Assembly (NCBI GenBank): GCA_002269645.1
Contig: NIVC01000834.1
Span: 186,001-250,000, forward strand
Direction: 5' to 3'
DNA: 64,000 nt
From: Macrostomum lignano
Lineage: Eukaryota
A program made the position numbers and the translations under genes. Each line of letters opens with the position of its first letter. Position 1 is the first letter of the stretch. Shown here piece by piece: positions 24,076 to 64,000 of this stretch. The notes beneath the pieces were generated by a model that had not been told where the DNA came from, did not search any database, and was given only the letters and a program-made list of their open reading frames with translations.

Positions 24076-27000
24076 TTACACATTCTGCCTTTCGCTGCGA
24101 ATCTTCTGAACCATGCTGCAAGCCATGACTACGCAAATGATCTGCAATCGGTTTTATTGTATGATTGATCAGTGGTGTGTCTATACCTCATGACTGAGTG
24201 TGTCTATACCTCATGACTGAGTGTGTCTATACCTCATGACTGATTGTGTCTATACCTCATGACTGAGTGTGTCTATACCTCATGTCTGAGTGTGTCTATA
24301 CCTCATGTCTGAGTGTGTCTATACCTCATGTCTGAGTGTGTCTATACCTCATGTCTGAGTGTGTCTACTTCATGACTAAGTGTGTCTACTTCATGACTGA
24401 GTGTGTCTACTTCATGACTGAGTGTGTCTATACTTCATGACTGAGTGTGTCTATACTTCATGACTAAGTGTGTCTACTTCATGACTAAGTGTGTCTACTT
24501 CATGACTGAATGTGTCTACTTCATGTCTAAGTGTGTCTATCCCTCATGACTGAGTGTGTCTACTTCATGACTAAGTGTGTCTATACCTTTATGTCTGAGT
24601 GTGTCTATACCTCATGTCTGAGTGTGTCTATACCTCATGTCTGAGTGTGTTTATACCTTTATGTCTGAGTGTGTCTATACCTCATGTCTGAGTGTGTCTA
24701 CTTCATGACCGAATGTGTCTACTTCATGTCTGAGTGTGTCTATACCTCATGTCTGAGTGTGTCTACTTCATGACTGAGTGTGTCTATCCCTCATGACTGA
24801 GTGTGCCTACTTCATGACTGAGTGTGTCTATACCTTTATGTCTGAGTGTGTCTATACCTCATGTCTGAGTGTGTCTATACCTCATGTCTGAGTGTGTTTA
24901 TACCTTTATGTCTGAGTGTGTCTATACCTCATGTCTGAGTGTGTCTACTTCATGTCTGAGTGTGTCTATACCTCATGTCTGAGTGTGTCTACTTCATGAC
25001 TGAGTGTGTCTATACCTCATGACTGAGTGTGTCTATACCTCATGACTGAGTGTGTCTATACTTCATGACTGAGTGTGTCTATACTTCATGACTAAGTGTG
25101 TCTACTTCATGACTGAGTGTGTCTACTTCATGACTAAGTGTGTCTACTTCATGACTGAATGTGTCTACTTCATGTCTAAGTGTGTCTATCCCTCATGACT
25201 GAGTGTGTCTATACTTCATGACTGAGTGTGTCTATCCCTCATGACTGAGTGTGTCTACTTCATGACTGAATGTGTCTACTTCATGTCTAAGTGTGTCTAT
25301 CCCTCATGACTGAGTGTGTCTATACTTCATGACTGAGTGTGTCTATCCCTCATGACTGAGTGTGTCTACTTCATGACTGAGTGTGTCTATACCTTTATGT
25401 CTGAGTGTGTCTATACCTCATGTCTGAGTGTGTCTATACCTTATGTCTGAGTGTGTCTATATCTTATGTCTGAGTGTGTCTATACCTCATGTCTGAGTGT
25501 GTCTATACCTCATGTCTGAGTGTGTCTATACCTTTATGTCTGAGTGTGTCTATACCTTTATGTCTGAGTGTGTCTATACCTCATGTCTGAGTGTGTCTAC
25601 TTCATGACTGAGTGTGTCTATACTTCATGTCTGAGTGTGTTTATACCTTTATGTCTGAGTGTGTCTATACCTCATGTCTGAGTGTGTCTATACCTCATGT
25701 CTGAGTGTGTCTACTTCATGACTAAGTGTGTCTACTTCATGACTGAGTGTGTCTACTTCATGACTGAGTGTGTCTATACTTCATGACTGAGTGTGTCTAT
25801 ACTTCATGACTAAGTGTGTCTACTTCATGTCTAAGTGTGTCTATCCCTCATGACTGAGTGTGTCTACTTCATGACTGAGTGTGTCTATACCTTTATGTCT
25901 GAGTGTGTCTATACCTCATGACTGAGTGTGTCTACTTCATGACTAAGTGTGTCTACTTCATGACTGAGTGTGTCTATACCTTTATGTCTGAGTGTGTCTA
26001 TACCTCATGTCTGAGTGTGTCTATACCTTATGTCTGAGTGTGTCTATATCTTATGTCTGAGTGTGTCTATACCTCATGTCTGAGTGTGTCTATACCTCAT
26101 GTCTGAGTGTGTCTATACCTCATGTCTGAGTGTGTTTATACCTTTATGTCTGAGTGTGTCTATACCTCATGTCTGAGTGTGTCTACTTCATGACTGAGTG
26201 TGTCTATACTTCATGTCTGAGTGTGTTTATACCTTTATGTCTGAGTGTGTCTACTTCATGACAGAGTGTGTCTATACCTCATGACTGAGTGTGTCTACTT
26301 CATGACTAAGTGTGTCTACTTCATGACTAAGTGTGTCTACTTCATGACTAAGTGTGTCTACTTCATGACTAAGTGTGTCTACTTCATGACTAAGTGTGTC
26401 TACTTCATGACTGAGTGTGTCTACTTCATGACTAAGTGTGTCTACTTCATGACTGAGTGTGTCTACTTCATGACTGAGTGTGTCTACTTCATGACTAAGT
26501 GTGTCTACTTCATGACTGAGTGTGTCTACTTCATGACTGAGTGTGTCTACTTCATGACTAAGTGTGTCTACTTCATGACTAAGTGTGTCTACTTCATGAC
26601 TGAATGTGTCTACTTCATGTCTAAGTGTGTCTATCCCTCATGACTGAGTGTGTTTATACCTTTATGTCTGAGTGTGTCTACCTCATGACTGAGTGTGTCT
26701 ACTTCATGACTAAGTGTGTCTACTTCATGACTAAGTGTGTCTACTTCATGACTGAGTGTGTCTACTTCATGACTGAGTGTGTCTATACTTCATGACTAAG
26801 TGTGTCTACTTCATGACTAAGTGTGTCTACTTCATGACTGAGTGTGTCTTCTTCATGTCTGAGTGTGTCTATACCTCATGTCTGAGTGTGTCTACTTCAT
26901 GTCTGAGTGTGTCTACTTCATGACTGAGTGTGTCTATACCTCATGACTGAGTGTGTCTACTTCATGACTGAGTGTGTCTATACCTCATGACTGAGTGTGT

Positions 27001-30000
27001 CTACTTCATGACTGAGTGTGTCTATACCTCATGACTGAGTGTGTCTATACTTCATGACTAAGTGTGTCTACTTCATGACTAAGTGTGTCTACTTCATGAC
27101 TGAGTGTGTCTACTTCATGACTAAGTGTGTCTACTTCATGACTGAATGTGTCTACTTCATGTCTAAGTGTGTCTATCCCTCATGACTGAGTGTGTCTATA
27201 CTTCATGACTGAGTGTGTCTATACCTCATGTCTGAGTGTGTCTATACCTCATGTCTGAGTGTGTCTATACTTCATGTCTGAGTGTGTCTATACCTCATGA
27301 CTGAGTGTGTCTACTTCATGACTGAGTGTGTCTATACCTTTATGTCTGAGTGTGTCTATACCTCATGTCTGAGTGTGTCTACTTCATGACTGAGTGTGTC
27401 TATACTTCATGACTAAGTGTGTCTACTTCATGACTAAGTGTGTCTACTTCATGACTAAGTGTGTCTACTTCATGACTTAGTGTGTCTACTTCATGACTGA
27501 GTGTGTCTATATTTCATGACTGAGTGTGTCTATACTTCATGAGTGAGTGTGTCTATACCTCATGACTGAGTGTGTCTACTTCATGACTGAGTGTGTCTAT
27601 ACCTCATGACTGAGTGTGTCTACTTCATGTCTGAGTGTGTCTACTTCATGACTGAGTGTGTCTATACCTCATGACTGAGTGTGTCTACTTCATGACTGAG
27701 TGTGTCTATACCTCATGACTGAGTGTGTCTACTTCATGACTGAGTGTGTCTATACTTCATGAGTGAGTGTGTCTATACCTCATGTCTGAGTGTGTCTATA
27801 CTTCATGACTGAGTGTGTCTATACCTCATGACTGAGTGTGTCTATACTTCATGACTAAGTGTGTCTACTTCATGACTAAGTGTGTCTACTTCATGACTAA
27901 GTGTGTCTACTTCATGACTAAGTGTGTCTACTTCATGTCTGAGTGTGTCTACTTCATGACTGAGTGTGTCTATACCTCATGACTGAGTGTGTCTACTTCA
28001 TGACTGAGTGTGTCTATACCTCATGACTGAGTGTGTCTACTTCATGACTGAGTGTGTCTATACTTCATGAGTGAGTGTGTCTATACCTCATGTCTGAGTG
28101 TGTCTATACCTCATGACTGAGTGTGTCTACTTCATGACTGAGTGTGTCTATACCTCATGACTGAGTGTGTCTATACTTCATGACTAAGTGTGTCTACTTC
28201 ATGACTAAGTGTGTCTACTTCATGACTGAGTGTGTCTACTTCATGACTAAGTGTGTCTACTTCATGACTGAATGTGTCTACTTCATGTCTAAGTGTGTCT
28301 ATACCTCATGTCTGAGTGTGTCTATCCCTCATGACTGAGTGTGTCTATACTTCATGACTGAGTGTGTCTATACCTCATGTCTGAGTGTGTCTATACCTCA
28401 TGTCTGAGTGTGTCTATACTTCATGTCTGAGTGTGTCTATACCTCATGACTGAGTGTGTCTACTTCATGACTGAGTGTGTCTATACCTTTATGTCTGAGT
28501 GTGTCTATACCTCATGTCTGAGTGTGTCTACTTCATGACTGAGTGTGTCTATACTTCATGACTAAGTGTGTCTACTTCATGACTAAGTGTGTCTACTTCA
28601 TGACTGAGTGTGTCTACTTCATGACTAAGTGTGTCTACTTCATGACTGAGTGTGTCTACTTCATGACTTAGTGTGTCTACTTCATGACTGAGTGTGTCTA
28701 TATTTCATGACTGAGTGTGTCTATACTTCATGAGTGAGTGTGTCTATACTTCATGACTGAGTGTGTCTATACCTCATGACTGAGTGTGTCTACTTCATGA
28801 CTAAGTGTGTCTACTTCATGACTAAGTGTGTCTACTTCATGACTAAGTGTGTCTACTTCATGACTGAGTGTGTCTATACCTCATGTCTGAGTGTGTCTAT
28901 ACCTCATGTCTGAGTGTGTCTATACCTCATGTCTGAGTGTGTCTATACCTCATGTCTGAGTGTGTCTATACCTCATGTCTGAGTGTGTCTATATCTTATG
29001 TCTGAGTGTGTCTACTTCATGAGTGAGTGTGTCTACTTCATGACTGAGTGTGTCTACTTCATGAGTGAGTGTGTCTACTTCATGACTGAGTGTGTCTACT
29101 TCATGAGTGAGTGTGTCTACTTCATGACTGAGTGTGTCTACTTCATGAGTGAGTGTGTCTACTTCATGACTGAGTGTGTCTACTTCATGACTGAGTGTGT
29201 CTACTTCATGATAGGGTATGCCCAGGGTGGATATTGATGTGTCCATTTTATCTTTGGAGTTGCACGCCGTCACAAAACTTGATTGTCAACTCTTGTGGCA
29301 GGTTTTTTGCTGCATCAAGAATGCATCAAACTTGGCATCCTATATGGTTATTATAGATGTCGCTTACCTCAAACATTCCAACCAGAATTCCAACCACTAT
29401 GATGGCTAAGGTGTAGCGATCGATATAGGAATTCAGTTTATCGTAGCAGCCCTGAAAGTTGGCATAGAAATTTCGAATCTGATTGGGCCTAGTATCACTG
29501 ATTAAAAAGTTCTGAGCAAATCAGGCAGGCTTGCTTAGTTTTTTCTGCACTTGTGACATCCTTGATCAGCGCTCATCATCCCTCAAACCTGCAGGTGTTG
29601 AAACAGCTTTGGAAGTCGCTCGGACAGATCCGGTGAATTGGGGGCCGGGAGGATGCGGCACCCTTTCGTCAGTGCACACACGGTGTTTAGAGCATTGATT
29701 TTCAGCACTTACAATGTACATGTACCATCAGATCATGTGTCAGGCTCAAAACTTTTTAGTGAATTACTCTCGTAATTTAAAAATGATTTATAACCTACCT
29801 ACTACCCCAAAATCCGATCACAGCTCCACCACCCCGTAGCCTCAACACCCCGGTAGCCCCACCACCCCGGTAGCCCCACACCCCGTAGCCCCACCACTCC
29901 GGTAGCCCCACACCCCGTAGCCCCACCACCCCGTAGCCCCACCACCCCGTAGCCCCACCACCCCGTAGCCCCACCACCCCGGTAGCCCCACCACATCGGT

Positions 30001-48027: not shown

Positions 48028-49558
48028 AGTGCTGAATAACATTATGTACTTTAGAGAGCTGTTATTGAGTTTGTTTAAGTGAGCAGTCCTCTGGCTTAGC
48101 GGTTCTAGTCTCCTGTCGAACCAAATATCGGGCATGAATTTGGCCTTTCTTAGTTAGACAAAAATCTTTTCATCAAATACTCGCTACTTTCTACTTATAT
48201 CCGATTTGCAAGTAGTATTGTGTACGAATTATTACTATTATTATGAAAAACAATTATATTTTATCTGGCTTTTCTCTTGCGCGCCCGTATGTAATTAAAA
48301 AGTACAACCTGTCCTATTTAGTTATTTTGTTTCAAACTGTCATTTTGCACTTTTATATTTATTGCTTGAAAACGTTTTCTTCATTCATCGAGCTCGAACG
48401 GAAAACGGTGTTATTTGTACCTTTGAATTACAACGCCTTCCTAGCTTTTAGTTCGATTTAAATTCTGTTTCCAAATCTGCTTCTTTCTGTGCCCGGTTTT
48501 GCTTTTTTACGCTTCATTCTCTGCGGTATTAATTTAATTTAATTGCAAAAGGATCTCGAACATGCCCGCTTATGCTACTGTCTGTCAACAAGTAGTAGCA
48601 TGGCAACAAAAAAAAGTTTTTTATTTACGCATTTTTCATTTCTGCATATATAATGTGCAGTTTGGGCGCAAGAAACGTATTAATACGAACATCTTTGTCG
48701 ACCAAAATAGAACGGTAGTTGTACTTTTAACTTTCTAATTACATTTTTAGTGTCACTTTTAGCCTAGTCAAGTATTTGGCCCTTTTCAACAGCTGATTGT
48801 TTGTTTTGTTAATAATAAGCCATTAATGTTACTTGCAAAAGGTTATTATTCATCTAGAACTATTAATTTGCTCTTTTATGCTTATGTTACTACTAATTTG
48901 AAGTAGTTAATAAGTAGTTTCTACTCATTTTTGGTTTAGTCCATTCAACTCTGATCATACATTGATATTGCAAGTTTCTTTTTATATGCGCGTTTTTTTA
49001 TAAGTTTTTGCTAAGTACATGCTGTACTTTCTATTAGGCTTGTGTATTTATATGTTCTAAAAATCACAACTAATATGCCCAATTACTTATATTATAGCTT
49101 TTTTGCTTCTACTAATAGTAGCTTAATTACATGTTCAAATTGCAATCTCTGAACATTTCTTATCATGCGATTCGAAAGTTGAAAAATTTTAATCGCCATA
49201 TGAATTTACTCTTTTTTCTGTTAATTGCTACACTTATATACATCTACATATATTGCATGTAATATATATTTAAATATACGAAAAATGTATTAGTTCGTAT
49301 TATTTAATTATAGTTATTGTTTTTAAGTCTGATATTATGCCAAGTCATTGGCTTCAATTTGTTTATTTAGACTTTGTTGATTTTAATGAAGTTTTTATTT
49401 AGGCTGTTATACCAGCATTATTAGGTAATCGAATAACTTTATATCGCAGTCCTTAAAATAAAAAATTCAATTTATTGCATGCGATCGAGTATTTCCCAGT
49501 CCATACATTGATAATTTGGTAAAAAACAGACGGCTAAAAGCAATCGATTCACAGCTCA

Positions 49559-50662
49559 ATGTCTTCGGGTCTGCCATCTGGATGGAGCTCCAAGGTCAGC
49601 AGCAAAACTGGCCGGACCTATTATGTTAACGACGTCACCAAAGAGACCCAGTGGGAAGTGCCTACTCATCCGGCTACAGGTAATTATAAGTTTAAATGCA
49701 GCGTTTTTCTTTACATGTTTTGCCCATCTCTTCCCATCAAATACACAGGCCAGTCAATCCTTACCCCTCAATGTACACTAGCCAGTCAATCCTTACCCCT
49801 CAATGTACACTAGCCAGTCAATCCTTACCCCTCAATGTACACAGGCCAGTCAATCCTTACCCTTCAATGTACACTAGCCAGTCAATCCTTACCCCTCAAT
49901 GTATACTAGCCAGTCAATCCCTTACCCCTCAATGTACACTAGCCAGTCAATCCTTACCCCTCAATGTACACTAGCCAGTCAATCCTTACCCCCTCAATGT
50001 ACACTAGCTAGTCAATCCCTTACCACTAAAAATGTACACTAGCCAGTCAATCCCTTACCACTAAATGTACACTGGCCAGTCAATCCTTACCCCTCAATTA
50101 CACTAGCCAGTCAATCCTTACCCCTCAATGTACACTAGCCAGTCAATCCTTACCCCTCAATTACACTAGCCAGTCAATCCTTACCCCTCAATGTACACTA
50201 GCTAGTCAATCCCTTACCACTAAAAATGTACACTAGCCAGTCAATCCCTTACCACTAAATGTACACTGGCCAGTCAACCCCTTAACCCTCAATGTACACC
50301 TAGGCGACGGCGGACACGGCAGGGGCGGCACCGTGCGCTGCCTCCACCTGCTCGTGAAGCACCGCGGCTCGCGCCGCCCGTCCTCCTGGAAGGAGCAGAC
50401 GGTGACTCGCAGCCAGGAGGAGGCTGAGGCCATGGTGAAAGAGTTCCGCCGCCGGATCGTGTCCGGGGAAGCGAGTTTCGAGCAGCTGGCCGAGCTTGAG
50501 TCGCACTGCAATTCGGCCAAACGAGGCGGCGACCTCGGCGCTTTCGGCCGCGGCCAGATGCAGCCGCCCTTCGAGGAGGCCGCTTTCGCTTTGCAGGTTG
50601 GCGAGATCAGCGACCTGGTGTACACCGACAGTGGGGTGCACATTATCAAGCGGGTCTCCTGA
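49559..50662 (+). CDS. PIN1: Peptidyl-prolyl cis-trans isomerase Pin1 (WW + parvulin), 159 aa
   Basis: Exons 49559-49679 and 50304-50662 (phase 1). WW: LPSGW...[16 protein letters not shown]. PPIase: [52 protein letters not shown]. Confidence 0.95.
49741..50303. repeat. 32-bp minisatellite (AGCCAGTCAATCCTTACCCCTCAATGTACACT)
   Basis: Pin1 intron; runs right up to the acceptor. Confidence 0.95.
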
Positions 50663-51818
50663 GGAGACCGGACTGCCGCTGACTTCTCGGTGTTGTTAAT
50701 AAATTATTATTTGCTTTTAATAATCATAATTATACTTATAGCATTGCTGTTGTCCTGTTAGGCAGTTTAACCAAGTTTTTAAAGGACAAAACAAATAAAC
50801 AGTTTTTCTGTAACCATTTATAATATTTTCGAAAAAATATGGTTATTAGATTTTAATTTTACTCTATTTTATTAATTCTGCTGGAGATGCAGGTAAGTTT
50901 TAAGCAAAGCTCTTGGAAAAATATCCGACAGATAATTGAATTTGGATCTGAGCTTACAAATTAGGTATAAGCATCCATCACAATCACGAACCTAATAATG
51001 CTGTTATTATGGAATGTGGCATTCGCTGTTTTTCGTTGGAACACAGAAAGCTCAGGAATTCATAAATATGTATATGATAAAAGACAGCTCATAAATATAT
51101 ACGAGTATAAGCGCACCTTTGGAAAGAATCAGTTAAAAGTGCGATTGTAGAACACCCTTAGGTAGTATTATTAATACATTGAATCCAAATCATCATGGAG
51201 CTAAAGCCAAAACGAAGAAAAACACTTTGAATTTTTGAAAATAAACTTTTTTCAACGGTAAAACTGTTAGAAGTTAGCAAAATTACAAGCGTAAATTATT
51301 GGCAGACTAAGATAGCTAAATGAATCCACAAAAGCGCTAAACAAAGCATACATGTACTTTCCGCGTTGTTTTGGAGGCAATGTACATTGTTTCTATTTTT
51401 AGAAGCGACGTTATCTTGGACGGCGTGCGCCAGTCTAAATCCCCCAATGAACATTGGTTTTTTTAGACATGACGCGCGCATGAATGCAGCTTTTAGGCCA
51501 GTATATTTTCTATTTTTAGAATCGAGCATGCACAATACGTGTACATTTATAGCACATAATTGAGAGGTCTGTTCTTTTATGTAACAATGTACATTGTGTC
51601 TATTTTTAGAATCTGACCTACGCGCAAACTGGCTCGTAGAAGATAACTAGACGACAGAAAATAATGGACGGGTTTCCCCAATCAGGGATGCTATTTTTAG
51701 AAGCAACGCTTTCTAAGTAAGGATGATACAAAAGCAGTTTATGCGAACGGTTCTATGCTAATGTTGCAGCTCTACTCTGGTACATAAATCTTGTAAAAAA
51801 ACTTGCAAACTTCTTAGT

Positions 51819-56988
<5,170 letters not shown>

Positions 56989-57364
56989 TTTTGTTAGAAG
57001 TGCTGAAAATCGGGTAATGGAAAAAGCTATTATCTAAGTCTAGGCAGAATTGGAATCAAAATTTGGATGCAGCTGGGAAGAATTAAACAGAACAGGTGAT
57101 TGCTTCTTATGTCAAAATTTGAATTTAGACCTAGTTTGTCCTTTGACAATATGAGCTATGCTCATCAACATTTATCTAATATGGAAAAAAGCAAAATTTT
57201 TATGAGTACTAAATTGAAAATTCAAAATGATTTAAAAGTTTTAAGTCGAATAAATATGACTGATTTAGAGAAATTATTTTCTCTAAATTATTATTGAGCA
57301 TTCGTGTAAAGATTTTAACCAGCATTAAACAGAAGAGGCTTCTGTATGATTACTAATCATGTAA

Positions 57365-57368
<4 letters not shown>

Positions 57369-57400
<32 letters not shown>
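57369..57400. repeat. (AT)n microsatellite
   Basis: Short pure run. Confidence 0.9.
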
Positions 57401-57404
<4 letters not shown>

Positions 57405-59639
57405 TTACTTTACCAGGAATTCTAAATAAAATTTGGCAGTTCTGTGAGAAATATGCAATTTATGCTTAAAATTACAGTCGCGCTTTAGGTACTTCATAAT
57501 GGGCTGTTGTGTGCTGCCTATAGGCATTGAGGCAAAATCATTTTTTAGGTTTTTTACCTGTTTGGTCAGATTATTCAAGGCTAAAAATTACTTTTATTAA
57601 AAATAAAGAGCAGCCTGAGATTTTTCTACAAAATTCTACTAGATTAAACCGAATAAAGGGTATAAATCAATTGTATCGCTTAAGAAATTACAAAGTAAAA
57701 GAATCCTATTATATTGCACAAAAACTCATGTGCATATCATACAGAGCAGTAATGCAAGTGTCGAAGTGCGGGTTGTTTAACAAATAAGGAAATCAGGACC
57801 AATACTAAAGTTTTAAACGTTGAACTTCTCAGTTGAACTCTTTGACTCGTTTAGCATGATATATAAATGTATTTTACTGGATTGCTTCAAAGAAAACGAA
57901 TGATATCTAGCAGATCTATCTGATTTTATCGAGTTGAGCAACTGCTTCAAATTTGGAGACGGTTGTTAAGGCAAAATTAGTAAAACAAGAAAAAAAATCT
58001 TAAAATGCAAAGGATTTGCTTTTGATTTCCTGTTATTGTTGTTGCAGCTTATTCTTTATGGCACTCTTTTTTTAAACTGTCAAAAAGCTTTGTTTTACTA
58101 ATCCAAGCTAAAATCATAATAAATTCGTGAAGTATTGCTAAAGTAAGTAGTCAAATTGAGCTGTTTTACCATTTTTAGTTCTTGCGCTAAAGTCTGGCTT
58201 TTTATCACATCAAATCGAAACTATTTAGATTAGGTTCCTAATTAGATCTAAACTGCTATACATGTACGTATGTATAGCATGCATGCAGCATGCAATGAGC
58301 ATGCAATGATGCAATGAGCTGAATGAAAAAAAGGAGAAATTAATTATTTTCTTTCGTGAAATACTACAAATCCTTGCATTCAGAAGAATAAAAATCTGCG
58401 AGTTTCCTGGGTTTCCTTGCCCAGATTTTCTGGGCAATTTTCTTGCACGTTTTGAAGGCAATTTTTCTCTTAAAGATACTTTTGCAAGAAAAAGACCTGG
58501 GTAACATTTGAATAAAAGTAGGAATATCTCGCAAAATGTGAAAAAAACTTGAGTTGTTCGCGAGCACCTCATTTCGAAGCCTTCTTCCTTTGTTCGCCTC
58601 ACTTTGCCCGATCTTTTGTTGCTTTAAGTTGTCTAAAAGCATGTCAAAAATATGTTCGCTAACATCAGATCAGAAGAGAAAGGAATACCAGCCTTAGTGG
58701 GTATTGTATGGCCTTAGCCTTGCTGCTCTAGTCAACAAAATCGCATGTTTTGTCGACAGGACGTCGATGATGCAGTCTGCATCCTCTTCTTGCACTTGTG
58801 CGTCTTGCCCTTCCATTTGTGCATCTGCAGCCTCCGTTTTTCTTTTGCTAGACAAACGATTTTTAGCAAAATGCTATAGCAAGGCAAAAAACTTTTTTCC
58901 CGGTTCTGTACCCAGTCATGTTTGTGTCTCTCAAGATTCCACCCAAACCGACCCAAGAGGTTGGCCCATAGACGACGCTTTGCTTCATAAAATCTTATTT
59001 ATTTACTAATAGCTTTTTGCGTTCTAGTTTGGACTGCGGGCTTCTAATTTGGACACAGAGTTGAGCAAAGCCCAGAGAATGCTGGCTAATCTATGGCACA
59101 AACCAGAAGCAACTGACGGGCTTTTAAATTCGAGCGCAGCGAGCCAATAGGATTCCCTATTGGGAATAATTTTCGTTTTTTTTGTTTTATATTTATATTT
59201 CGAAAGTATATATTTGAAGGTTTTTTAAATGCATCACAATTAGAAAAGCAGTAATTAGCTGAGTATTAAGATTCTTCCTACGTGTGCATGTACTCGCGGT
59301 ACTTGTCTAATGCTAATAAATGTCATAGCGTTCAAATTAAATCGCTGAGCTACTTTTACATGCAGGGGCAAACCGGCAAAGCCAGGGATGCAAGCCGGCC
59401 GTGGCCCCATCGGCTGGCGGAAAGCACGCATATATTGGATGGAGACATTGCTCCTTGCGAAAGTTTTGAGCTGCACAAATTATAATCATTATGCAAGGTC
59501 AGATTTCAACACTATATAGATTTGCAATTTCCTCTGGACAAGTATCCGCAGCATTCTAGAAGCACATACATGTAATGCTGTATTCTCGATATGTTGTAAT
59601 TTGCTTCTCTTAAAAGTAGCCTAGCCTAGTAGCCTGCGA

Positions 59640-60452
59640 GATTGCTGCCGCCTCAGACACCCAACAAACTGCCGCCTCAGACACCCAACAAACTGCCGCC
59701 TTAGACACCCAACAAACTGCGCCTTAGACACCCAACAAACTGCCGCCTTAGACACCCAACAAACTGCCGCCTTAGACACCCAACAAACTGCCGCCTCAGA
59801 CACCCAACTAACTGCCGCCCCAGACACCCAACAAACTGCCGCCCCAGACACCCAACAAACTGCCGCCTCAGACACCCAACAAACTGCCGCCTCAGACACC
59901 CAACAAACTGCCGCCTCAGACACCCATCCCAACAAACTGCCGCCTTAGACACCCAACAAACTGCCGCCTTAGACACCCAACAAACTGCGCCTTAGACACC
60001 CAACAAACTGCCGCCTTAGACACCCAACAAACTGCCGCCTTAGACACCCAACAAACTGCCGCCTCAGACACCCAACAAACTGCCGCCTCAGACACCCAAC
60101 AAACTGCCGCCTCAGACACCCAACAAACTGCCGCCTTAGACACCCAACAAACTGCGCCTTAGACACCCAACAAACTGCCGCCTTAGACACCCAACAAACT
60201 GCCGCCTTAGACACCCAACAAACTGCCGCCTCAGACACCCAACTAACTGCCGCCCCAGACACCCAACAAACTGCCGCCCCAGACACCCAACAAACTGCCG
60301 CCTCAGACACCCAACAAACTGCCGCCTCAGACACCCAACAAACTGCCGCCTCAGACACCCATCCCAACAAACTGCCGCCTTAGACACCCAACAAACTGCC
60401 GCCTTAGACACCCAACAAACTGCCGCCTCAGACACCCAACAAACTGCCGCCC
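59640..60452. repeat. 24-bp minisatellite (GCCGCCTCAGACACCCAACAAACT)
   Basis: About 33 tandem copies. Confidence 0.96.
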
Positions 60453-63098: not shown

Positions 63099-63353
63099 AC
63101 CTAAGGAAAAATATTAAATGAAATTTTTAACGCACAATGAGCGCCAAGTCCTGTGCGAGGCTTTGGAGTTGCTTCACTCAATAAACTATCGTAAAGGTGC
63201 CCTATGCCGAATTTATTGATTAAGATTTTTTCAATGGTTTAATTGGAACTTATGATGTGGCGGCCTGGCTTAGTTTTATTTTTTATTGCCTCAGGTGTGC
63301 AGGCTTATCAGTCCGCCGATAGGTAATTATCAAGTAATCAGCTCGCAAGGCAA

Positions 63354-63562
63354 TTAGCGCTTCTTGTAGTCGGCAAATCGTTTGTAGTCGGCGAAACGTT
63401 TGTAATCGGCGAAGCGCTTCTTATAGTCGGCGAATCGTTTGATGTTCAGACCGACAGGCTGGCGGTCCAGCAGCTGCTTCAGGCTCAGGGACCGGAGAGG
63501 CTCAATTGCAGACCAGCGCTGACGGCCGGACGACTGCGGCTGCGGCATCCGCTCTGGGGGGT
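63354..63562 (-). CDS. Terminal exon of a probable neuropeptide precursor with four FADY repeats (gene continues beyond window)
   Basis: Acceptor actttcag| at 63562 (alternative ttttctcag| at 63581); ...VGLNIKR-FADY-KKR-FADY-KR-FADY-KR-FADY-KKR*; copies differ only at synonymous positions; two AATAAA ~70 nt after the stop (63275-63287). Confidence 0.72.
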
Positions 63563-63599
63563 CTGAAAGTTTTGTTGCTAACTGAGAAAACAAAATTCA

Positions 63600-64000
63600 C
63601 CTGCAGAGGGGAGTCAGCTGCAGGGGGGGGAGTCAGCTGCAGAGGGGGGAGTCAGCTGCAGGGTGGGGGAGTCAGCTGCAGGGGGGGAGTCAGCTGCAGG
63701 GTGGGGGAGTCAGCTGCAGGGGGGGGAGTCAGCTGCAGAGGGGGGGGGAGTCAGCTGCAGGGGGGGGAGTCAGCTGCAGAGGGGGGAGTCAGCTGCAGAG
63801 GGGGAGTCAGCTGCAGAGGGGGAGTCACCTGCAGAGGGGGGAGTCAGCTGCAGAGGGGGGGGAGTCACCTGCAGAGGGGGGAGTCACCTGCAGAGGGGGG
63901 AGTCAGCTGCAGAGGGGGAGTCAGCTACAGAGGGGGGGAGTCACCTGCAGAGGGGGAGTCAGCTGCAGAGGGGCGCCAGCTACAGAGGGGGGAGTCACCT
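63600..64000. repeat. 17-21-bp G-rich minisatellite (GGGGGAGTCAGCTGCAGA), truncated by window end
   Basis: Presumed intron upstream of the FADY exon. Confidence 0.95.

What the first reader, a model, noticed from the sequence alone, without database searches (positions are those of the whole stretch)
63354..63562. Candidate new neuropeptide precursor: four KR-flanked FADY peptides under synonymous-only divergence
Seen: the minus-strand exon ends KR-FADY-KKR-FADY-KR-FADY-KR-FADY-KKR-stop. Codons vary only silently (R CGA/CGC/CGT, F TTC/TTT, D GAC/GAT, Y TAT/TAC, K AAA/AAG). That is unlike every minisatellite in the window, where variation ignores frame. It has a proper acceptor and tandem AATAAA downstream. 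Established: repeated short peptides between dibasic sites are the hallmark of prohormone convertase substrates. Inference: it yields a non-amidated tetrapeptide FADY (no Gly donor), plus possibly a ...QPVGLNI peptide. I do not recognise it as a named family.
Basis: partly seen in the sequence, partly recalled or inferred. Interest (0 to 1): 0.82.

Follow-up and report, generated by a model that had tools for sequence, protein, structure and literature searches.

The report
Unannotated flatworm FADY multi-copy peptide exon
The last exon of an unannotated gene in the flatworm Macrostomum lignano encodes four identical FADY tetrapeptides between dibasic cleavage sites and is clearly under protein-level selection, so it is a credible but unproven candidate for a new lineage-specific secreted signalling peptide (neuropeptide-like) precursor.

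Summary
On the minus strand, 63354-63593 is an open frame ending ...QPVGLNI-KR-FADY-KKR-FADY-KR-FADY-KR-FADY-KKR-stop. All 5 variable nucleotide columns are at codon position 3, all 17 pairwise differences are synonymous, and both indels are one codon. Neutral simulation gives P about 1e-4 to 4e-4. None of 106 comparable blocks from the window's other tandem arrays shows this pattern, so this is selected coding sequence and not a minisatellite.

The window is Macrostomum lignano contig NIVC01000834.1, positions 186,001-250,000. No protein in the public collections contains this exon, there is no Pfam or PDB match, and no paper prints KRFADY.

The neuropeptide reading stays unproven. The exon needs an upstream exon to supply a signal peptide. 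The 400 nt of upstream sequence still in the window is a 19-nt minisatellite, and DNA beyond 64,000 could not be fetched. The internal ATG product has no hydrophobic core. No transcript evidence could be checked.

Best reading (about 0.5): the terminal exon of a convertase-processed multi-copy peptide precursor yielding non-amidated FADY. Main rival: a conserved basic/aromatic C-terminal tail of a non-secreted protein. If true, it is a new member of a known kind, of moderate interest.

The parts
63354..63356 (-). TAA stop codon directly after the last KKR
63357..63440 (-). 28 codons: KR-FADY-KKR-FADY-KR-FADY-KR-FADY-KKR. Four identical tetrapeptides separated only by dibasic or tribasic sites. 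Units are 18 or 21 nt and differ at 11-22% of nucleotides with no amino-acid change.
   Evidence: 5 of 5 variable columns at codon position 3; 17 synonymous and 0 non-synonymous differences; neutral P about 1e-4; 0 of 106 control blocks
63441..63461 (-). QPVGLNI, directly before the first KR. It could be released as (pyro)QPVGLNI only if the monobasic site LLDR|Q is cut (Lys at P6). This is inference.
   Evidence: sequence; monobasic-site rule from general knowledge; not tested
63462..63581 (-). Non-repeat, P/Q/S/R-rich part of the exon (LATKLSDPPERMPQPQSSGRQRWSAIEPLRSLSLKQLLDR), a putative propeptide spacer. Codon usage is best in this frame (+7.3 bits versus -12 to -29 in the other five frames) but not significant against random open stretches (28% score as high).
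63546..63548 (-). Only in-frame ATG in the exon, in a weak Kozak context (C at -3). The 64-aa product that would start here has no hydrophobic core.
   Evidence: max 9-residue Kyte-Doolittle mean 0.5 versus 2.5-3.4 for real signal peptides
63582..63596 (-). Stronger candidate 3' splice site A (aattttgttttctcag|), phase 0, for cis- or SL trans-splicing
63563..63565 (-).
63597..63599 (-). In-frame TGA that closes the reading frame upstream, so the exon cannot extend further 5' in this frame
63275..63287 (-). Two tandem AATAAA poly(A) signals, 66 and 73 nt after the stop
   Evidence: P of at least 2 in 100 nt = 0.009
63608..63997 (.). 19-nt minisatellite (about 20 copies) filling the putative upstream intron to the window edge. 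It contains no ATG. Confirmed introns of neighbouring genes are likewise filled with minisatellites.

Best explanation
Window 63354-63581 (minus strand) is the terminal coding exon of an unannotated Macrostomum lignano gene for a multi-copy peptide precursor. The proposed mechanism has four steps. First, an upstream exon beyond the window supplies the start codon and signal peptide (inferred, not seen). Second, in the secretory pathway a PC2-type prohormone convertase cuts after each KR/KKR (inferred from the architecture; M. lignano has a nervous-system PC2 homolog). Third, a carboxypeptidase trims the basic residues, giving four copies of the free-acid tetrapeptide FADY. There is no Gly, so no amidation. 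The Asp-Tyr context would also allow Tyr sulfation, which is speculative. (Pyro)QPVGLNI might be released as well. Fourth, the peptides act as secreted signalling molecules, most likely neuropeptides. Shown here: the sequence, its frame-specific purifying selection, the dibasic tiling, the stop, the acceptor and poly(A) signals, and the lack of any known homolog. Inferred: secretion, processing, and signalling function.
For: Peptide string and codons. Selection on the peptide and on the basic sites: 17 synonymous and 0 non-synonymous differences, 5 of 5 variable columns at position 3, codon-sized indels, neutral P 0.8-4e-4, and 0 of 106 control blocks from other arrays. The exactly antisense frame is open, but the same differences change its amino acids. 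The look-alike minisatellite RR-QFVGCL has near-identical nucleotide copies, frame drift and stops, which shows what a non-coding array looks like here. The copies are separated only by KR/KKR and the ORF stops right after the last KKR. Acceptors are comparable to real ones and tandem AATAAA follows. Codon usage is best in this frame. M. lignano has a PC2 homolog expressed in the nervous system and required for development (PMC4490696). Absence from the annotation is explicable. Gene models come from transcript assemblies with TransDecoder ORF calling (PMC5730564), and TransDecoder by default ignores ORFs under 100 aa (my own knowledge). No similarity to any non-prohormone protein.
Against: No signal peptide is visible. 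The in-window sequence has none, and the upstream exon is only hypothesised. No transcript, EST, peptide or in situ evidence could be consulted. No ortholog or paralog was found among 1.84 billion representative proteins or in the planarian prohormone catalogue, so there is no cross-species conservation yet. A non-amidated tetrapeptide is an unusual, though not unprecedented, neuropeptide. The dibasic-tiled architecture also arises by chance from a minisatellite in this same window. Codon usage of the non-repeat part is not significant against random open frames.
Confidence: 0.5

Rival explanations
1. The exon is the conserved C-terminal tail of a larger protein that is not convertase-processed. 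Examples would be a basic/aromatic KRFADY repeat acting as a nuclear-localisation, nucleic-acid-binding or protein-interaction motif, or a secreted structural or adhesive protein. The KR pairs would then be functional residues and not cleavage sites.
For: Purifying selection is equally expected under this reading. The rest of the exon is P/Q/S/R-rich and looks disordered (composition). The exon must be joined to unseen upstream exons of unknown size. No signal peptide has been seen.
Against: Perfect identity of four very short units separated only by dibasic sites, with the stop directly after the last KKR, is typical of prohormones and unusual for structural tails. There is no similarity to any known protein or domain. 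No annotated protein ends in this exon, although proteins of 100 aa or more from transcripts were annotated.
Confidence: 0.25
2. It is a stand-alone small gene. The acceptor is an SL trans-splice site, and translation starts at the internal ATG (63548) to give a 64-aa non-secreted basic protein.
For: 38.8% of M. lignano genes are SL trans-spliced and about 7% of transcription units are polycistronic (PMC5730564). The exon has an in-frame ATG 14-34 nt downstream of the candidate acceptors. An ADK-like gene lies downstream on the same strand.
Against: The ATG has a weak context (C at -3). The 64-aa product has no recognisable domain or hydrophobic segment. A cytosolic protein has no evident reason to keep exact KR-FADY tiling.
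Confidence: 0.1
3. It is not a gene. It is an old 18-nt tandem repeat whose open frame and third-position variation are coincidental, or a dead exon.
For: Tandem repeats are about 15% of this genome and fill this window. One of them mimics a dibasic-flanked peptide array. About 10% of random 47-codon stretches are open. There is no annotation and no homologs.
Against: Neutral P of the synonymous-only pattern is 1e-4 to 4e-4, and 0 of 106 control blocks show it. Indels are whole codons. Unit divergence is high (TRF 77% matches, versus 85-96% for the neighbouring arrays) yet peptide identity is 100%. The stop, the acceptor and the tandem AATAAA all coincide.
Confidence: 0.08
4. It is a divergent flatworm ortholog of the achatin family (Gly-Phe-x-Asp/Asn tetrapeptides such as GFAD or GFGN).
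For: Tetrapeptide copies lie between dibasic sites and share the F-A-D core with achatin-I GFAD (my own knowledge for GFAD). Achatins are usually tetrapeptides (PMC6188537).
Against: The defining N-terminal Gly-Phe is absent. Here Phe is residue 1 and the peptide ends in Tyr, so the register is shifted by one. Planarians have no recognisable achatin ortholog (PMC3890597). A three-residue match in a four-residue peptide is easily chance.
Confidence: 0.03

Closest known systems
Multi-copy neuropeptide precursors (MCPs) of flatworms and other spiralians, such as the S. mediterranea npp/spp prohormones of Collins et al. 2010 (PMC2953531)
   Same: Several identical short peptides are tiled between KR/KKR sites at the C-terminal end of a small ORF. 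The host has PC2. The sequence is lineage-specific with no detectable homologs, as with many spp genes.
   Different: Signal peptide, total length, cDNA and peptide detection are all unverified here. The peptide is only 4 residues and not amidated. FADY-like strings are absent from that catalogue and its supplements.
Achatin family (GFAD / GFGD / GFGN tetrapeptides)
   Same: Non-amidated acidic tetrapeptides containing Phe, repeated between dibasic sites. The F-A-D core is shared with achatin-I.
   Different: There is no N-terminal Gly. Phe is at position 1 and not position 2, so the position-2 D-Phe isomerisation logic does not apply. The C-terminal residue is Tyr and not Asp/Asn. No orthology evidence exists.
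Yeast alpha-factor and TRH-type precursors (general convertase-processed repeat precursors)
   Same: They share the mechanistic logic: tandem copies of one short peptide released by Kex2/PC cleavage at KR, followed by carboxypeptidase trimming.
   Different: Those precursors have spacer peptides and other post-translational marks. There is no sequence relationship, so this is an analogy of mechanism only (my own knowledge).
Non-coding minisatellites of the M. lignano genome, such as the 24-nt array at window 59,645-60,451 that reads RR-QFVGCL-RR...
   Same: A short-period tandem array that translates into identical peptides between dibasic residues, embedded among other arrays.
   Different: The control array has near-identical nucleotide copies, drifts through all three frames, and contains stops and amino-acid changes. 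The FADY array has diverged nucleotides, one frame, whole-codon indels and no amino-acid change.

Membership tests
Neuropeptide / peptide-hormone prohormone (criteria of Collins et al. 2010, PMC2953531) | N-terminal signal sequence | not testable with these tools
The in-window part has no hydrophobic core.
Neuropeptide / peptide-hormone prohormone (criteria of Collins et al. 2010, PMC2953531) | Basic cleavage sites flanking the predicted peptides | tested here: met
   KR or KKR lies on both sides of all four FADY copies, and the basic codons themselves are conserved with only synonymous change.
Neuropeptide / peptide-hormone prohormone (criteria of Collins et al. 2010, PMC2953531) | Precursor shorter than 200 amino acids | not testable with these tools
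   Only the last 69-75 residues are visible.
Neuropeptide / peptide-hormone prohormone (criteria of Collins et al. 2010, PMC2953531) | No similarity to genes annotated as something other than a prohormone | tested here: met
   No hit among 5.8 billion clustered proteins. Only two spurious repeat-driven hits among 1.84 billion representatives. No Pfam family. No PDB chain.
Neuropeptide / peptide-hormone prohormone (criteria of Collins et al. 2010, PMC2953531) | Verified by cDNA or transcript, and by peptide detection (MS) | not testable with these tools
   No transcript or peptidome resource for M. lignano is reachable. The protein collection holds only NCBI genome-annotation proteins for this species.
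Achatin family | Tetrapeptide with Gly at position 1 and Phe at position 2, ending in Asp/Asn (G-F-x-D/N) | tested here: not met
   The peptide is F-A-D-Y, with no Gly, Phe at position 1 and C-terminal Tyr. Family definition from PMC6188537.
C-terminally amidated neuropeptides (FLP / NPF / FMRFamide-like peptides of flatworms) | Gly immediately before the basic cleavage site as amide donor | tested here: not met
   Every copy reads ...ADY-K(K)R, and there is no Gly.
Non-coding minisatellite | Copy-to-copy variation and indels independent of reading frame | tested here: not met
   All 5 variable columns are at codon position 3, there are 17 synonymous and 0 non-synonymous differences, and indels are 3 nt. 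0 of 106 control blocks behave this way, in contrast with the array at 59.6-60.4 kb.

The most novel reading that the evidence does not exclude
FADY is the founding member of a previously uncatalogued, Macrostomum- or flatworm-specific family of non-amidated (possibly Tyr-sulfated) tetrapeptide transmitters. It would be encoded by a small precursor that transcriptome-based annotation missed, and it would act through an orphan GPCR.
Probability: 0.35. Interest if true: 0.5.

Novelty: new member of a known kind. Interest (0 to 1): 0.4.

Why it matters
If confirmed, it adds an uncatalogued signalling peptide to Macrostomum lignano, the transgenic flatworm model for regeneration and reproduction. 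Very short non-amidated peptides like this escape the amidation-motif and homology-based screens used to build flatworm neuropeptide catalogues. It would give a concrete ligand for receptor deorphanisation and RNAi. It would also show that synonymous-only divergence between repeat units can separate real peptide arrays from the minisatellites that make up about 15% of this genome. It does not challenge any concept, because lineage-specific multi-copy precursors are found in every phylum examined.

Tried and rejected
1. Extending the locus past 64,000. Exact-sequence look-ups of the window ORFs found nothing.
   - The septin neighbour gave the homeologous contig NIVC01001981.1 (L001) and the window's own contig NIVC01000834.1 (L003). 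The 10-kb flanks stop at about window 58,000.
   - I rebuilt the annotated ADK-like proteins from splice sites. The L001 gene gave a unique 553-aa model and the window gene gave a 556-aa model.
2. My third and last homolog search, with an ADK exon at an E cut-off of 1e-10, returned nothing although the annotated protein contains that exon. That was a wasted call, and it shows the word index can miss proteins. I therefore rely on the exhaustive HMMER search for the negative result on FADY.
3. A degenerate DNA pattern for FADY-KR-FADY in metagenome contigs gave one hit (L002). It is a two-copy 18-nt repeat in AT-rich DNA inside a 15-codon ORF, so I rejected it as chance.
4. The two HMMER hits were both rejected.
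   - P0121 is a 955-aa Logan repeat protein that matches only the spacer region.
   - P0122 is an ENA ORF with NIKYFVDYQP repeats and no dibasic sites.
5. Literature strings FADY, KRFADY, RFADY and FADYK return only author names, a bryozoan GPB5 fragment and FLAG-tag constructs. McVeigh et al. 2009 (PMC2749192) is not held.
6. Codon-usage scoring of the spacer gave the right frame but was not significant against open-frame nulls.
7. Rfam found nothing in the window.

Full report
**What is there.** Reading the minus strand, 63593..63354 is an open frame of 79 codons. It ends ...LLDRQPVGLNI-KR-FADY-KKR-FADY-KR-FADY-KR-FADY-KKR-TAA. An in-frame TGA at 63599-63597 closes the frame upstream.

Two AG acceptors precede the coding part:
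- aattttgttttctcag|TTA, with the exon starting at 63581 (phase 0).
- aaaactttcag|AC, with the exon starting at 63562 (phase 1).

Compared with the eight confirmed acceptors of the septin and ADK-like genes in this window, both candidates are at least as good, and the first has the best polypyrimidine tract of all.

Two overlapping AATAAA motifs lie 66 and 73 nt after the stop, at 63287-63275. Two such motifs within 100 nt occur at 0.9% of random window positions.

**Is it more than chance?** This genome is saturated with minisatellites (67 TRF rows in 64 kb), so chance is the real question. Three tests bear on it.

- *Variation within the array.* Among 21 aligned nucleotide columns, 5 vary, and all are at codon position 3 of the open frame. 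All 17 pairwise differences between the four units are synonymous. The only transversions fall on the four-fold-degenerate Arg codon. Both length differences are a whole AAG codon. Placing the 6 minimal mutation events at random gives an all-synonymous outcome with P = 0.8e-4 to 4e-4.
- *Empirical null.* I aligned the copies of the 10 other arrays in the window whose period is a multiple of 3. Of 106 four-copy blocks with at least 4 variable columns, none has all of them in one phase.
- *Look-elsewhere check.* A regex scan of all six frames for identical peptides tiled between dibasic sites finds only one other locus, the 24-nt minisatellite at 59.6-60.4 kb, which reads RR-QFVGCL-RR-QFVGCL. 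So the "prohormone architecture" by itself can be produced by a minisatellite here. That array, however, has virtually identical nucleotide copies, slips through all three frames, contains stops, and shows RR>GR and F>L changes. The FADY units differ at 11-22% of nucleotides (TRF 77% matches) with no amino-acid change.

The exactly antisense frame is also open, but the same differences change its amino acids.

My conclusion is that the repeat has been maintained by selection on this peptide sequence, including the basic residues. The non-repeat 47 codons score best in the same frame by codon usage (+7.3 bits versus -12 to -29). That is not significant against random open stretches, 28% of which score as high.

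**Where it is.** The septin exon at 45.7-46.6 kb is 100% identical to M. lignano proteins. The window's septin equals BOX15_Mlig003072g4. The window maps to NIVC01000834.1, positions 186,001-250,000, of assembly GCA_002269645.1.

Annotated neighbours are a tetraspanin, the septin (43,766-48,027, + strand), a Pin1-type rotamase, and an ADK-like gene (51,819-56,985, - strand). Their introns are filled with minisatellites. A 19-nt minisatellite between this exon and a further-upstream exon would therefore be normal for this genome.

Two further homeologous or allelic copies of the locus exist in the same assembly. One of them, L001, is collinear with the window at 91-99% identity.

**Is it known?**
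- No protein among 5.8 billion clusters shares significant similarity with the exon.
- An exhaustive HMMER scan of 1.84 billion representatives gives two hits. Both turn out to be repeat-driven coincidences without dibasic sites.
- There is no Pfam family and no PDB chain.
- KRFADY, RFADY and FADYK appear in no paper as a peptide.
- The planarian prohormone catalogue and its supplements contain nothing FADY-like.
- A degenerate DNA scan of metagenome contigs gives one chance hit.

Absence from the M. lignano annotation is not strong evidence against expression. Gene models there derive from transcript assemblies with TransDecoder ORF calling (PMC5730564). TransDecoder by default discards ORFs under 100 aa (my own knowledge). 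The protein collection holds only genome-annotation proteins for this species and no RNA-seq-derived ones.

**What could not be tested.** A prohormone needs a signal peptide. The only in-frame ATG in the exon (63548) has a weak context, and its 64-aa product has no hydrophobic core. Its maximum 9-residue Kyte-Doolittle mean is 0.5, against 2.5-3.4 for reference signal peptides.

The 400 nt upstream to the window edge is pure 19-nt minisatellite without any ATG. The start codon and any signal peptide must therefore lie beyond 64,000. I could not fetch that DNA. No transcript data are reachable.

**Mechanism proposed.** I put the probability of this reading at about 0.5.
1. An upstream exon provides the Met and signal peptide.
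2. The precursor enters the regulated secretory pathway.
3. A PC2-type convertase cuts after each KR/KKR. M. lignano has a nervous-system PC2 homolog whose knock-down is lethal (PMC4490696).
4. Carboxypeptidase trimming leaves four FADY free-acid tetrapeptides. There is no Gly, hence no amidation.

Asp at -1 of the Tyr makes sulfation conceivable. The K-x-x-x-x-R|Q context makes a (pyro)QPVGLNI product conceivable. Both points are my inference. Only the architecture and the selection are shown here. Secretion, cleavage and signalling are inferred.

**Rivals.**
- A conserved basic/aromatic C-terminal tail of a non-processed protein (0.25). Selection is equally expected under this reading, and the upstream exons are unknown.
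- A trans-spliced stand-alone 64-aa ORF (0.1). 38.8% of M. lignano genes are SL trans-spliced.
- Not a gene (0.08). This is disfavoured.
- A divergent achatin (0.03). Achatins are G-F-x-D/N tetrapeptides. FADY lacks the Gly and is shifted by one register, so the defining feature is not met.

**Verdict.** The exon is genuine selected coding sequence with the form of a multi-copy, dibasic-processed peptide precursor, and it is uncatalogued. Calling it a neuropeptide precursor remains a reasonable hypothesis. It is missing three of the standard criteria: signal peptide, cDNA, and peptide or expression evidence. If true, it is a new member of a well-known kind and of moderate interest.

Noticed in passing
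window 59,645-60,451 (minus strand): A 24-nt minisatellite translates as RR-QFVGCL-RR-QFVGCL..., mimicking a prohormone. Nucleotide copies are near-identical, the reading drifts through all three frames, and stops occur. It is a ready-made false positive for motif-based neuropeptide mining in this genome.
   Followed up: yes
window 51,819-56,985 (minus strand); L001 12,540-15,831: This is an ADK-like gene with two adenylate-kinase-type P-loop regions, an RIIa/Dpy-30-like N-terminus (KDYITKREIPQLFE...) and an IQ-like C-terminus (IQAGFRGYQVRK). The annotated models start without Met (5'-partial), so at least one 5' exon is missing between about 57 and 59 kb. One intron holds about 102 copies of a 20-nt repeat (53,545-55,555).
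   Followed up: partly
The word-indexed protein search returned nothing for an ADK exon that is 98% identical to an annotated M. lignano protein on record. Negative results from that tool alone should not be trusted.
   Followed up: partly
window 38,977-58,891 versus L001 (NIVC01001981.1 1-17,726): A second copy of the locus in the same assembly is collinear at 91-99% identity, with different minisatellite lengths. A third copy exists (BOX15_Mlig003072g2 on a 200-kb contig). This fits the known partial genome duplication of the DV1 line. These copies should carry FADY homeologs useful for dN/dS analysis.
   Followed up: partly
window 63,357-63,570 (plus strand): The exactly antisense frame of the FADY exon is open for about 70 codons (LALLVVGKSFVVGETFVIGEALLIVGESF...). 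Its repeat residues are not conserved, so it is probably a by-product of the codon composition of the sense strand.
   Followed up: yes
window 16,998-18,935 (plus strand): A 645-codon open frame has unique, coding-looking N- and C-terminal parts joined through a 14/26-nt minisatellite (17,657-18,267). It is probably two exons of an unidentified gene with a repeat-filled intron that happens to stay open.
   Followed up: no
window 1-2,311: This is a (TAGA)n microsatellite of about 578 copies at 96% purity. Other very long arrays lie at 24,175-29,211 (23-nt, about 228 copies) and 13,738-15,526 (15-nt, about 119 copies).
   Followed up: no
P0122 (ENA metagenome ORF, 313 aa, 4-kb contig): This is a repeat protein with (D/I)TNIK(Y/D)FVDYQP(M/I) units that shares NIK-F-DY with GLNIKRFADY (E = 9e-4 across the whole library). 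It has no dibasic sites and its origin is unknown. I judged it coincidental.
   Followed up: partly
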